IMG/VR virus record: IMGVR_UViG_3300037294_000266
Span: 62,001 to 126,000 of that record
Length of the DNA stretch: 64,000 nucleotides
Reading direction: 5' to 3' (one strand)
How positions within the stretch are numbered: the first letter of the stretch is position 1; each line of letters starts with the position of its first letter. The translations under genes were made by a program, and so were the position numbers. The notes under the pieces were generated by a model, which saw only the letters and a list, made by a program, of their open reading frames with translations, was not told where the DNA came from and did not search any database. This document shows positions 57,398 to 61,539 of this stretch, piece after piece.

Positions 57398-57491
57398 GAT
57401 ACCCCCTACAGGATTCGAACCCATGCTCGCGCAGTATCCGAATGCGAATTTGGACACTACCCAGCTCTAACCAACTGAGACTTAAAGAGGC
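57397..57491 (-). ncRNA. tRNA-like RNA with 7-bp anticodon stem and 12-nt loop
   Basis: Acceptor GCCTCTT/AGGGGGT, CTCAGTTGGTTAGAG D-arm, AGTGTCC/GGATACT, T-loop TTCGAAT, A-TCA end. Confidence 0.65.
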
Positions 57492-57504
57492 TTAACAGAA
57501 ATCG

Positions 57505-57825
57505 TGGGTTGATGACCTGAAGCGGTCTTAGATGTTTTCACATCACCCGTCAACCTACTGGGCTTGCCGTTACCATTTCGCCCGAATGGTCAAGGGGATC
57601 TGTCATACGCTTCTAGATCTTGGGCAGGGCGGTGACTAAACAGTTCTATTGTTCAGACACATCCTTCTCGGGGTGCGGCTTTGGACTTCCCTGATCGCAC
57701 GTCTCCAATAGACTAGAGGATGCGGTCGTAGGGTTTCAGATAAGAGATCAGACTGTGCAGTCCGGTGCCTAGGTGAGTAGGGCACTGTCTTGATCAATCA
57801 TTCCCCAGCTGGTTGAGGGGGAATT
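57505..57825 (-). ncRNA. Run of structured non-coding elements
   Basis: GGTTGA/TCAACC junction with GATGT-GAAA-ACATC and GACC/GGTC, plus ACCATT/AATGGT, GTGCC/GGCAC, GACTG/CAGTC and ATTCCCC/GGGGAAT. No ORF of 60 aa or more in the track. Confidence 0.5.
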
Positions 57826-57828
57826 AAA

Positions 57829-57910
57829 CACCTCTAGCGAGTCTCGAAGTCGCACACCGTCGATTAGAATGGCTACCAATCGACTGTCCTACCAATTGGA
57901 CGATAGAGGT
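57829..57910 (-). ncRNA. tRNA-like RNA with 7-bp anticodon stem and 12-nt loop
   Basis: Perfect acceptor ACCTCTA/TAGAGGT, D-arm GTCC-AATTGGTA-GGAC, GTCGATT/AATCGAC, T-loop TTCGAGA. No encoded CCA. Confidence 0.75.
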
Positions 57911-57924
57911 ATAAACGCTGTATG

Positions 57925-58050
57925 TAAGTATGATGGGATTCAAACCCACGTACGCTTTGGTATAGCCAATGGACTGGCACCTCGGCGTTCTAGTCCAACC
58001 GTCCGCGTTACCGGACATTTCACCCTTAAGCCAGGCTCAGGAACATACTC
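57925..58050 (-). ncRNA. 126-nt tRNA-like RNA with three hairpins between the D- and T-arms
   Basis: Acceptor GAGTATG/CATACTT, D-stem CCT/AGG, hairpins GTCC/GGAC, GGACT/AGTCC and TTGG/CCAA, T-arm GTGGG-TTTGAAT-CCCAT. Confidence 0.7.
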
Positions 58051-58060
58051 ACACACAAAC

Positions 58061-58148
58061 AGGTGGCAGCCGACCGAGTTCCCCCGATCCGATCCAGTAT
58101 GGGTTCGAAAACGCACTAAGGCAATCGACGTACTGAACTTAAGCTACC
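58061..58148 (-). ncRNA. Degenerate tRNA-like element (acceptor, long arm, T-like arm, ACCT end)
   Basis: GGTAGCT/GGCTGCC, TTCAGTA/TACTGGA, GATCG/CGGTC. Confidence 0.5.
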
Positions 58149-58157
58149 ATTGTAACG

Positions 58158-58270
58158 TCGAGAACGCGGGCCGGCGCCGCGTATGGCTGCCTCATTGGGC
58201 TGCCGATCATAGTGCGCGCTGCCACTAGGGCTGCCGCTGATCCGGTGCGGAGACGAACCCGCGTTCTCGA
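58158..58270. ncRNA. Multibranch hairpin with 13-bp closing stem and four GGCAGC motifs
   Basis: TCGAGAACGCGGG/CCCGCGTTCTCGA. GCTGCC on the + strand at 58186, 58199, 58218 and 58230. Confidence 0.65.
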
Positions 58271-58321
58271 ACTCTTACACGATTGTTAATCGTGATTAAA
58301 ATGGCGATTTGGCGTAATTAT

Positions 58322-58858
58322 TTAAGCTGTCGTATAGCGTTTACCGGAGTGTATGTTCTCTACAACACCCCTACTAATTCCAAACATTCTGGCTATTTCA
58401 CGCTGAGAATGTTTACCCTTTAATGAGAGAACTCTATTCGCCTCTTCTTGAGTAAGAACAGCATTATGACTATCGGCTCCGCGACGTTGTTTCAATAAAC
58501 CATTTTCTTTTGCATGGTCCATATTACCTTGCCGAGTAGTCCACTCTAATTGAGTGTAACCATTTTTGGCTTTATCGCAGAAAACATGATTGACTTCAAG
58601 ATCATCACTTTCTCTTCCAACAAAGGCTTTGGCAACCTGTACATGGATTTTTATACAGATGTTCTTACCCTTCCTACCACCTATTTTACTAGCATGGGTC
58701 AGGTAGCCATTATGATTCAATGTCTGAGACAGTATTTTACCTGTCCTGCGACTTCTCAAGGTGCCTTTCGAACCAATATCAAAGTGTTCTGGATAATCCG
58801 GACACGGAACAAATATTTCATCTTCGTCGTCAAGTGTCCAGCCAACTAATTTACTCAT
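58322..58858 (-). CDS. Free-standing NUMOD4-HNH homing endonuclease with C-terminal HTH
   Basis: IGSKGTLRS, IHVQVAKAF, EVNHVFCDKAKN...LEWTTRQGNMDHA, SQREIARMFGISRG. Start at 58858 with GGAGG. Confidence 0.85.
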   Translation of the reverse strand: MSKLVGWTLDDEDEIFVPCPDYPEHFDIGSKGTLRSRRTGKILSQTLNHNGYLTHASKIGGRKGKNICIKIHVQVAKAFVGRESDDLEVNHVFCDKAKNGYTQLEWTTRQGNMDHAKENGLLKQRRGADSHNAVLTQEEANRVLSLKGKHSQREIARMFGISRGVVENIHSGKRYTTA

Positions 58859-58865
58859 GTTGACC

Positions 58866-58889
58866 TCCATCTGTTTATTGTCAGATGGA
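58866..58889 (-). promoter_or_regulatory. Hairpin occluding the HNH ribosome-binding site
   Basis: TCCATCTG-ACAATAAA-CAGATGGA overlaps GGAGG, with TACATTA immediately upstream. Confidence 0.6.
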
Positions 58890-58912
58890 TAATGTATGAT
58901 CTAAAGAAAAGG

Positions 58913-58949
58913 AACAGCCAGCTACTCTACCTGTCTGAGCTATCATGGA
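58913..58949 (-). pseudogene. 5' half of tRNA-Asn(GUU), truncated right after the anticodon
   Basis: TCCATGA-TA-GCTC-AGACAGGTA-GAGT-A-GCTGG-CT-GTT, then unrelated HNH leader sequence. No matching 3' half (CCAGC...TCATGGA) found. Confidence 0.75.
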
Positions 58950-58957
58950 ATTAAATT

Positions 58958-59203
58958 GTGTAGCGCTGAGGACTTTCACCTCTCCTTTTCATGTCAGAGT
59001 TTAGTCGGACACGGAACACAACGCCACCTATGTTCAGAGTAATCGCCTGTCAGGACGGAATCCACCTTCATGGTGCGCGATGCGCACCATTGCTGACAGA
59101 CTATTGCTACAACGGAACGGAGACCAGTCCTATTCAGAACCGATAAGACAGCCGTGAAGAAGTCTCGTCCGTTCTGCCTTTGCAGCAAATTCTTCTAGGC
59201 ATA
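58958..59203 (-). ncRNA. Long-hairpin structured element(s) plus decayed tRNA-like tail
   Basis: TTGCTGCA/TGTAGCAA-closed hairpin, GTCTGTCAG/CTGACAGGC enclosing ATGGTGCGC/GCGCACCAT, T-like GAGG-TGAAAGT-CCTC. TATG at 59200-59203. Confidence 0.5.
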
Positions 59204-61095: not shown

Positions 61096-61539
61096 CTATC
61101 TCTTCTGTAAGACGGTGATAAACCGTCGATCGTGGTAAGGGAAGATGGCTTTGTAAACCAGACTGATGTCTTTGTCCCAACTAAGACCGCCATTGCCACA
61201 ACCCATAGGGGGTAGGGCGATTGTTCCCATCTGAGGATGACGATTGGCAAGTACGGCCAATCGATTGATGTTGTGGATAACTAAGCCCCGTGGAGACTTT
61301 TGCTTCCAGTCTAATTTGGTAGGTATGAGGAGATAAAGTACTCCATCATGCTTGTACGTGATAAACTGTCCCGGTTCGATCGTCGAGTACATCTTCTTGT
61401 AATGTTTGTAGAGCCCTGGAATGTTATCACGGGCTGATTTTGCCACGCCGGCGCCCATTGCCCCTACAAGGTTAATTGTGATGACTTTAGTATCTGCTTT
61501 GACGGACAGGATGTCGTTGTATTCGAACTCTAGAGACAT
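61096..61539 (-). CDS. DarG/OARD1-like macro domain protein
   Basis: INLVGAMGAGVA, IPTKLDWKQKS, TIALPPMGCGNGGLSW. Confidence 0.8.
   Translation of the reverse strand: MSLEFEYNDILSVKADTKVITINLVGAMGAGVAKSARDNIPGLYKHYKKMYSTIEPGQFITYKHDGVLYLLIPTKLDWKQKSPRGLVIHNINRLAVLANRHPQMGTIALPPMGCGNGGLSWDKDISLVYKAIFPYHDRRFITVLQKR

What the first reader, a model, noticed from the sequence alone, without database searches (positions are those of the whole stretch)
58061..58270. Hairpin displaying four GGCAGC motifs next to their complement
A 13-bp perfect stem encloses sub-hairpins (TAGTG/CACTA, GATC/GATC) that leave GGCAGC largely single-stranded four times, as CsrB/RsmZ display GGA. Three copies read GGCAGCC, exactly complementary to the GGCTGCC acceptor strand of the tRNA-like unit immediately downstream. 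It is a candidate protein sponge or RNA switch.
Basis: partly seen in the sequence, partly recalled or inferred. Interest (0 to 1): 0.7.

Follow-up and report, generated by a model that had tools for sequence, protein, structure and literature searches.

The report
Conserved Y-shaped RNA in phage tRNA cluster
The hairpin is real and belongs to a previously undescribed, evolutionarily conserved Y-shaped small RNA sitting among the tRNA genes of a small group of giant bacteriophages, but its four GGCAGC motifs are paired with each other rather than displayed, and their match to the neighbouring tRNA-like unit is peculiar to this one genome.

Summary
The window is part of a 266-kb jumbo phage; its genes here lie on the minus strand. 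The sequence observation holds. There is a 13-14 bp stem (58270-58257 / 58171-58158) enclosing four GGCAGC motifs, followed by a unit ending GGCUGCC-ACC.

The interpretation mostly fails:
- The hairpin folds as a three-way junction in which motif 1 pairs with motif 2 and motif 3 with motif 4, each helix carrying a central A.A mismatch. Every motif base except that A has P(unpaired) < 0.02.
- I found homologues in five other phage lineages. The fold is kept (39 pairs, 96.9% paired, 18 pairs with compensatory changes).
- The motif count drops to two in two lineages, and two or three motifs are altered in a third.
- The unit's 3' strand pairs with its own local 5' strand, which covaries. It is GGCUACC or GGCUGUC in all relatives, so exact complementarity to the motifs occurs only in this genome.

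No Rfam family matches either element. My best reading is a new small structured RNA, co-transcribed with the phage tRNAs and cut out by tRNA-processing enzymes. Its invariant arm (CAGCY-loop-GGCAG with A.A) is probably a protein-binding site. Function is unproven and no expression data were available.

The parts
58158..58270 (-). Hairpin RNA ('HP'): a Y-shaped three-way junction. P1 is 58270-58257 with 58171-58158, and P2 is 58250-58247 with 58180-58177.
   Evidence: The window and DT01 sequences fold independently into the same architecture. Covariance models score 134-149 bits here and 40-113 bits in five other lineages. Eighteen of 39 pairs show compensatory changes.
58205..58242 (-). Arm A. 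The base helix is GAUCA/UGAUC. Motif 1 (58235-58229) pairs with motif 2 (58223-58217) around an A.A mismatch and a bulged G, with apical loop CUAGU.
   Evidence: The base helix covaries, 4 of 5 pairs changing on both sides. The apex CAGCY-loop-GGCAG, including both A's, is invariant in the five aligned lineages (L092 shares it).
58185..58204 (-). Arm B. Motif 3 (58204-58198) pairs with motif 4 (58191-58185) around an A.A mismatch, with loop CAAUGA.
   Evidence: The helix is kept but the sequence changes: GGC-G-GUCC...GGAC-AUC-GCC in L064 and L067, G.U in DT01, A.G in L068 and L092.
58062..58148 (-). 'Unit': a tRNA-like three-way junction.
- Acceptor-like stem: 58148-58142 with 58071-58065.
- Variable middle arm: 58138-58092.
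- 7-bp arm with GGAA tetraloop: 58089-58072.
- 3' ACC: 58064-58062.
   Evidence: Three homologues folded here (window, L030, DT01) give the same fold; the two conserved stems are also base-paired in L067, L064 and L092. The acceptor stem is 100% paired in six sequences with two compensatory pairs. The middle arm is a substitution hot spot, with 13 substitutions and 2 indels against L030.
58278..58294 (-). Small spacer hairpin CACGAUU-AACA-AAUCGUG between the tRNA-Asn 3' end and HP.
   Evidence: Read from the sequence. It is present in L030, L067 and L064.
58302..58305 (-). GCCA remnant, the discriminator plus CCA of the truncated tRNA-Asn gene that precedes HP in relatives.
   Evidence: Contigs of a close relative carry an intact tRNA-Asn here.

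Best explanation
Shown:
- 58158-58270 (minus strand) encodes an independently folding RNA of about 115 nt.
- It has a long closing helix (P1 plus P2) and two arms.
- The four GGCAGC motifs form the two strands of those arms, so each arm is a GC-rich helix with a 1x1 A.A internal loop.
- The fold is conserved with many compensatory changes in six lineages of one jumbo-phage clade: the window phage, L030, L067, L064, Pseudomonas phage pPa_SNUABM_DT01, and L068/L092.
- It is always on the tRNA strand, inside the tRNA/ncRNA cluster, and directly beside the tRNA-like unit, in either order.

Inferred:
- HP is co-transcribed with the tRNAs. Its ends are made by the tRNA-maturation machinery: RNase P cutting at the 5' end of the adjacent unit or tRNA, and 3' trimming after the preceding CCA or ACC.
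- The tRNA-like unit would therefore act as a processing handle, much as mascRNA does for MALAT1 or as flanking tRNAs do for the stable RNAs in the phage T4 tRNA cluster.
- Because the arm A apex (CAGCY-loop-GGCAG with A.A) is invariant while everything around it drifts, the mature RNA most likely works by binding a protein at that arm. Arm B would be a second, looser site.
- The partner and the biological role (anti-defence decoy, or tRNA/RNA metabolism) are unknown.
For: - Same fold from independent folding of the window and DT01 sequences, with z-scores -4.1 and -3.2.
- On alignment A6, 96.9% of cells are paired and 18 pairs carry changes on both sides. No shuffle of 500 reached these values, and slid controls gave 27-40% paired.
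- G.U pairs fit the minus strand only. The reverse strand scores 25 bits against 149 bits.
- One copy per genome.
- Context and gene order were read.
- The hairpin has zero differences from the ~99% relative, while the neighbouring unit arm has 13.
- The arm A apex is invariant in the five aligned lineages, and L092 carries the same apex.
Against: - There is no expression evidence. No RNA run was listed and no significant promoter or terminator was found.
- RNase P processing is inferred from geometry only.
- In L092 the nearest canonical tRNA lies about 180 nt downstream of HP.
- No candidate binding protein was identified.
- The arm A helices never vary apart from two one-sided changes to wobble pairs and one change on both sides, so covariation gives little direct proof of their pairing. 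That pairing rests mainly on thermodynamics.
- Only six lineages, in roughly three clades, were found.
Confidence: 0.55

Rival explanations
1. The hairpin displays single-stranded GGCAGC motifs as a CsrB/RsmZ-type protein sponge, or acts as a switch by pairing GGCAGCC with the unit's GGCUGCC strand.
For: There are four motifs in 51 nt and an exact 7-nt complement 114-164 nt downstream in this genome. The hairpin and the unit are adjacent in every lineage whose flanks are held.
Against: - The motifs are paired, with P(unpaired) <= 0.02. Opening them costs at least 17 kcal/mol.
- The arm B motif sequence is replaced in L064 and L067 with the helix kept.
- The unit's 3' strand is GGCUACC or GGCUGUC in relatives and covaries with its local partner, not with the motifs.
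Confidence: 0.05
2. HP and the unit are two domains of one RNA of about 210 nt: a tRNA-like handle plus a Y-shaped domain, in the manner of Y RNA/YrlA or tmRNA. The domain order would be circularly permuted between clades.
For: The two are strictly adjacent with only 5-9 nt between them, in both orders. HP precedes the unit in the window, L030, L067 and L064. The unit precedes HP in DT01 and L092.
Against: - No conserved base pairing between the two was found.
- There is no Rfam match to YrlA, Y RNA or tmRNA.
- The phage has no Ro (TROVE) or RtcB gene.
- The acceptor-like stem followed by ACC predicts cleavage between the two modules.
Confidence: 0.2
3. A purely cis-acting element of the tRNA operon with no trans function. 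It could be an RNase III or other processing site, a folding insulator between tRNAs, or a terminator or pause site for the phage RNA polymerase.
For: It has about 20 bp of nearly continuous closing helix and sits between RNA genes. No partner is known.
Against: A processing stem or insulator does not explain the invariant apex of arm A or the conserved three-way junction. No U-tract follows the hairpin. The closing helix is the part that drifts freely.
Confidence: 0.15
4. A DNA-level element: a cruciform, or repeated protein-binding sites for replication, packaging or homing.
For: It is a near-palindromic repeated heptamer, and an HNH homing-endonuclease gene is adjacent in this genome.
Against: - The HNH gene is absent from relatives that keep an identical hairpin.
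- Several conserved G.U pairs would be A.C mismatches on the other strand.
- The motif sequence itself is not conserved in arm B.
Confidence: 0.05

Closest known systems
Small stable RNAs embedded in phage tRNA clusters (phage T4 'species 1 and 2' RNAs, rnaC/rnaD). Named from my own knowledge, not compared here.
   Same: A non-tRNA structured RNA encoded among phage tRNA genes on the same strand. It is presumably released by tRNA-processing nucleases, and its function is unknown.
   Different: No sequence comparison was possible, so this is an analogy of context only. The Y-shaped fold with A.A helices is not known to me from those RNAs.
MALAT1-mascRNA and the mitochondrial 'tRNA punctuation' principle (own knowledge)
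   Same: A tRNA-like structure directly abutting another RNA, so that RNase P or RNase Z cleavage would define that RNA's end.
   Different: Those are eukaryotic systems. Cleavage is inferred here, not shown. The unit lacks D and T loops.
CsrB/RsmZ sponge RNAs
   Same: Several copies of a short G-rich motif within one small RNA.
   Different: There the GGA motifs sit in loops or single strands and bind CsrA/RsmA. Here the motifs pair with each other, contain no conserved GGA, and vary in number.
GOLLD, ROOL and manA-type phage-associated structured RNAs
   Same: Conserved structured RNAs of unknown function in phage genomes, often next to tRNA genes.
   Different: GOLLD and ROOL are several-fold larger and all are unrelated in sequence. 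There is no Rfam match.
Type I-F CRISPR repeat hairpin and RNA anti-CRISPRs (Racr; PMC10651486)
   Same: The arm A apex is a 5-position stem with a 4-8 nt loop whose 3' strand is GGCAG followed by C in five of the six lineages, as in CUGCC-GUAUA-GGCAG|C. The C6-G20 equivalent pair, which is crucial for Cas6f, is present. DT01 infects P. aeruginosa.
   Different: The U7-A19 pair is replaced by A.A. The loop and flanks differ, overall identity to the repeat is low, and no CRISPR-DR family matched. This resemblance is a lead only.
phi29 packaging RNA (pRNA)
   Same: About 120 nt, with 5' and 3' ends paired in a long helix, a three-way junction and two hairpin arms.
   Different: There is no Rfam match. 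The loops show no conserved complementarity. pRNA belongs to small phi29-like phages, not to this clade.

Membership tests
CsrB/RsmZ-type sponge RNA | Repeated binding motifs exposed in hairpin loops or single-stranded stretches | tested here: not met
   All motif bases but the central A have P(unpaired) <= 0.02, and the motif-open fold is at least 17 kcal/mol worse. The same pairing appears in DT01.
CsrB/RsmZ-type sponge RNA | Motif (GGA core) and its multiplicity conserved among homologues | tested here: not met
   There is no conserved GGA. The GGCAGC count is 4, 4, 4, 2 and 2, and altered in L068/L092.
tRNA (for the adjacent 'unit') | Cloverleaf with D arm, anticodon arm and T loop, recognised by tRNA models | tested here: not met
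   It is not called by ARAGORN, even at relaxed thresholds, nor by Rfam RF00005 at E <= 10. The second arm ends in a tetraloop, not a T loop.
tRNA (for the adjacent 'unit') | 7-bp acceptor stem followed by a discriminator and CC(A) | tested here: met
   GGUAGCU pairs with GGCUGCC and is followed by ACC. The stem is 100% paired with compensatory changes in six sequences.
tmRNA (standard or permuted) | tRNA-Ala-like domain plus a tag reading frame, detected by ARAGORN or Rfam | tested here: not met
   There is no tmRNA call at default settings and no Rfam tmRNA hit on the region. The relaxed ARAGORN tmRNA calls lie elsewhere.
Y RNA / YrlA | Match to the family model, with a Ro (TROVE) protein partner encoded nearby | tested here: not met
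   There is no RF00019 or RF02553 hit on HP or the unit. The 266-kb genome has no TROVE or RtcB gene.
Any Rfam 15 family | Score at or near the gathering threshold | tested here: not met
   Nothing at E <= 10 overlaps 58062-58270, and nothing at E <= 5 overlaps the homologous sites in L030 and L002.
RNA anti-CRISPR (type I-F repeat mimic) | High identity to a host CRISPR repeat, including an intact Cas6f stem | tested here: inconclusive
   Compared by eye only. The 3' strand GGCAG and the closing C-G pair match, but U-A is replaced by A.A and the loop and flanks differ. No CRISPR-DR hit. The host of the window phage is unknown.
Phage T4-type stable RNAs of tRNA clusters | Accumulates as a discrete stable RNA processed from the tRNA precursor | not testable with these tools
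   No RNA-seq run holding this sequence was listed.

The most novel reading that the evidence does not exclude
The Y-shaped RNA is an RNA-based counter-defence decoy. Its two near-identical GC helices, each with an unpaired A and the first invariant as CAGCY-loop-GGCAG, would trap a host hairpin-recognising immune protein such as a Cas6f-like endoribonuclease or a tRNA-targeting nuclease. It would be produced in bulk by riding on the phage's tRNA-processing pathway through a tRNA-like handle, and the gene order of that handle has been permuted during evolution.
Probability: 0.12. Interest if true: 0.75.

Novelty: new variant of a known kind. Interest (0 to 1): 0.45.

Why it matters
Phage tRNA clusters are increasingly seen as counter-defence loci, yet the non-tRNA RNAs inside them are almost unstudied. 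This is a compact RNA of about 115 nt with unusually clear covariation for so few sequences. It has an invariant arm that points to a specific partner, and a tRNA-like neighbour that may serve as its processing handle. One member, pPa_SNUABM_DT01, is a cultured phage of Pseudomonas aeruginosa, so the RNA can be tested directly. If it proves to be a decoy or a regulator, it would add a new class of phage-encoded functional RNA. If not, it remains a well-defined candidate for a new RNA family.

Tried and rejected
- Rfam scans at the gathering threshold and at E <= 10 found nothing on HP or the unit.
- blastn against GenBank phages found no similar sequence (the DT01 copy turned up only in a local blastn of the syntenic locus).
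- Exact-pattern scans gave only chance hits in GC-rich coding DNA: IMG/VR, JGI metagenomes and GTDB genomes (the scan stopped at 120 hits, the 80 returned as loci were checked with the covariance model).
- A looser IMG/VR pattern gave one true hit, L092.
- A protein-anchored IMG/VR search found nothing.
- A covariance-model search of the five next-nearest GenBank jumbo phages found nothing.
- Group I intron or tRNA intron carrying the HNH gene: rejected. The relative has 36 nt of tRNA-Asn 3' half in place of the 607-nt cassette, and that half is nowhere else in the genome.
- RNase P RNA for the neighbouring ~320-nt RNA: motifs seen by eye only, no Rfam support.
- Diversity-generating retroelement as the cause of the unit's hot spot: rejected, because the changes are not restricted to A.
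- Protein-coding reading (plus-strand ORF 57869-58228): rejected, because the region is replaced in relatives and the changes are compensatory.
- Conserved loop-loop or HP-unit complementarity: none found by inspection.
- RNA expression: no run was listed.

Full report
**Where it lies.** The window is bases 62,001-126,000 of a 266,646-bp virus record from a salt-lake metagenome. Flanking proteins match jumbo-phage families. The nearest GenBank relative is Pseudomonas phage pPa_SNUABM_DT01, with 67% amino-acid identity in a baseplate protein and a syntenic region. Genes around the finding lie on the minus strand, so I read the finding on that strand.

**Checking the observation.** The sequence facts hold:
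- Positions 58270-58258 pair perfectly (13 bp) with 58170-58158.
- Four GGCAGC motifs lie at 58235, 58223, 58204 and 58191, and three of them read GGCAGCC.
- GGCUGCC followed by ACC lies at 58071-58062.

Chance is an unlikely explanation:
- GGCAGCC is about three-fold enriched in the window, with 0 of 100 shuffles matching.
- The cluster is unique in the genome.
- The fold is better than all 200 shuffles, z = -4.1.

- Both the window sequence and the DT01 homologue fold on their own into the same Y shape. A 14-bp P1 and a short P2 lead to a three-way junction.
- In arm A motif 1 pairs with motif 2. In arm B motif 3 pairs with motif 4. GGCAGCC is self-complementary except for its central A, so each arm is a GC helix with an A.A mismatch.
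- In the Boltzmann ensemble every motif base except that A is paired, with P(unpaired) <= 0.02.
The best fold with the motifs held open scores -43.2. The minimum-energy fold scores -60.6.
The TAGTG/CACTA helix is not conserved.

**Homologues.** Sequence searches and strict pattern scans returned only chance hits in GC-rich coding DNA. I found homologues in other ways:
- A local blastn of the syntenic region gave the DT01 copy.
- Contigs from public runs gave a ~99% identical relative, L030.
- A neighbouring 143-aa protein served as an anchor and gave L067 (92% aa), L064 (a 267-kb compost phage, 73% aa) and L068 (44% aa).
- A degenerate pattern plus the covariance model gave L092, a 259-kb IMG/VR phage close to L068.

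Covariance-model scores are 134-149 bits for the window and 40-113 bits for the others. There is one copy per genome. The model found nothing in the five next-nearest GenBank jumbo phages. It also found nothing in the 80 prokaryote-genome pattern hits returned as loci.

**Covariation.** On the five-lineage alignment:
- 96.9% of cells are standard pairs.
- 18 of 39 pairs change on both sides.
- No shuffle of 500 reaches these values, and sliding the partners drops pairing to 27-40%.
- P1, P2 and the base of arm A covary heavily.
- Arm B keeps its helix while its sequence changes. It is GGC-G-GUCC...GGAC-AUC-GCC in L064 and L067, has a G.U in DT01, and has A.G in L068 and L092.
- The apex of arm A, CAGCY-loop-GGCAG including both mismatched A's, is invariant in the five aligned lineages, and L092 has the same apex.
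- Several conserved G.U pairs fit only the minus strand.

The GGCAGC count is therefore four in three lineages, two in two lineages, and two exact plus altered copies in the last. This speaks against a motif-display sponge.

**The neighbouring unit.** Positions 58148-58062 fold in three homologues folded here (window, L030, DT01) as a three-way junction with four parts:
- a 7-bp acceptor-like stem;
- a variable middle arm;
- a 7-bp arm capped by a tetraloop, stacked against the acceptor's 3' strand;
- a 3' ACC.

The acceptor's 3' strand pairs with a local 5' strand. The pairs are GGUAGCU/GGCUGCC in the window, GGUAGCU/GGCUACC in L030, L067, L064 and L092, and GACAGCU/GGCUGUC in DT01. Pairing is 100% with two compensatory positions. 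Exact complementarity to the hairpin's GGCAGCC therefore exists only in this genome, where a U.G pair happens to stand in place of U-A. The unit is not a tRNA by ARAGORN or Rfam. Its middle arm carries 13 substitutions and 2 indels against L030, including a compensatory U-A to C-G change. The hairpin carries none.

**Context and likely mechanism.** Gene order differs between clades:
- In L030, L067 and L064 the order is tRNA-Asn (then tRNA-Asp in L064), a small hairpin, HP, the unit, variable modules, a ~320-nt RNA, then a tRNA.
- In DT01 and L092 the order is the unit, HP, then tRNA-Asn, directly or after some distance.

HP and the unit are always 5-9 nt apart, in either order, on the tRNA strand. 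I infer co-transcription with the tRNAs and release by RNase P and 3' trimming, with the unit serving as a processing handle. The invariant arm A apex suggests a specific protein partner. None of this is shown. No RNA run was listed and the promoter and terminator scans were uninformative.

**Comparison with known systems.** No Rfam family matches.
- The CsrB/RsmZ analogy fails on display and on conservation.
- tmRNA and Y RNA fail on the family models and on the absence of Ro and RtcB genes.
- The closest analogies are contextual: stable RNAs in the phage T4 tRNA cluster and tRNA-like processing handles (both from my own knowledge), and phage-associated structured RNAs near tRNAs.
- The arm A apex resembles a type I-F CRISPR repeat hairpin with A.A in place of U-A. 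That is a speculative lead towards an RNA anti-CRISPR-like decoy.

**Verdict.** This is a real, conserved and previously uncatalogued small structured RNA of a narrow jumbo-phage clade. The proposed single-stranded display and the complementarity switch are not supported. Function is unknown and interest is moderate.

Noticed in passing
window 58306-58949 (minus strand): tRNA-Asn(GUU) is truncated in this phage. Its 5' half (58949-58913) ends exactly after the anticodon. A 607-nt cassette with an HNH/NUMOD4 homing-endonuclease gene (ORF 58870-58322) then replaces the 36-nt 3' half, leaving only GCCA (58305-58302). Relatives L030, L067 and L064 have the intact tRNA and no HNH gene here. The missing half is nowhere else in the genome.
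   Followed up: yes
window 57498-57824 (minus strand): A conserved structured RNA of about 320 nt with a long-range closing helix. Seven pairs change on both sides against L064. It lies just upstream of a tRNA (tRNA-His in L064). No Rfam match. It contains an RNase P CR-I-like string (AGGGAAGUCC), but no RNase P model matches.
   Followed up: partly
window 57821-58060: This 240-nt stretch holds two degenerate tRNA-like genes. In the ~99% relative L030 it is replaced by 243 unrelated bases that include another long hairpin (L030:5038-5135, z = -3.3) and an expanded tRNA-like fold. It looks like a swappable cassette inside the RNA cluster.
   Followed up: partly
window 57828-57911, 57959-58040 and 57400-57491 (minus strand): Aberrant tRNA-like genes. 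One scores 41.5 bits with the Rfam tRNA model but has a 16-nt anticodon loop that can be read as UCU (Arg) or GGU (Thr). The whole 266-kb genome has only two canonical tRNAs, Ser-UGA and Thr-GGU.
   Followed up: partly
window 58092-58150: A substitution hot spot in the unit's middle arm. There are 13 substitutions and 2 indels in about 55 nt against L030, compared with about 1% divergence in the flanks and none in the hairpin. They include a compensatory U-A to C-G change.
   Followed up: partly
L064, L002 and L092 (tRNA clusters of relatives): The canonical tRNAs next to the hairpin are Asn-GUU, Asp-GUC and His-GUG. These are three of the four queuosine-family (GUN anticodon) tRNAs, the set targeted by colicin E5-type anticodon nucleases (the latter from my own knowledge).
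   Followed up: no
L068:8118-8561: In the L068 lineage a gene with the Pfam 'Sequestin' domain (PF21825) lies about 340 nt upstream of the hairpin. A Macro-domain gene (window 61096-61539) and a phosphatase-like gene lie upstream in the window.
   Followed up: no
window 59071-59081: A perfect 9-bp hairpin (AUGGUGCGC-AUC-GCGCACCAU) in the non-coding stretch upstream of tRNA-Asn carries five clustered changes in L030. Those changes create a different palindrome.
   Followed up: no
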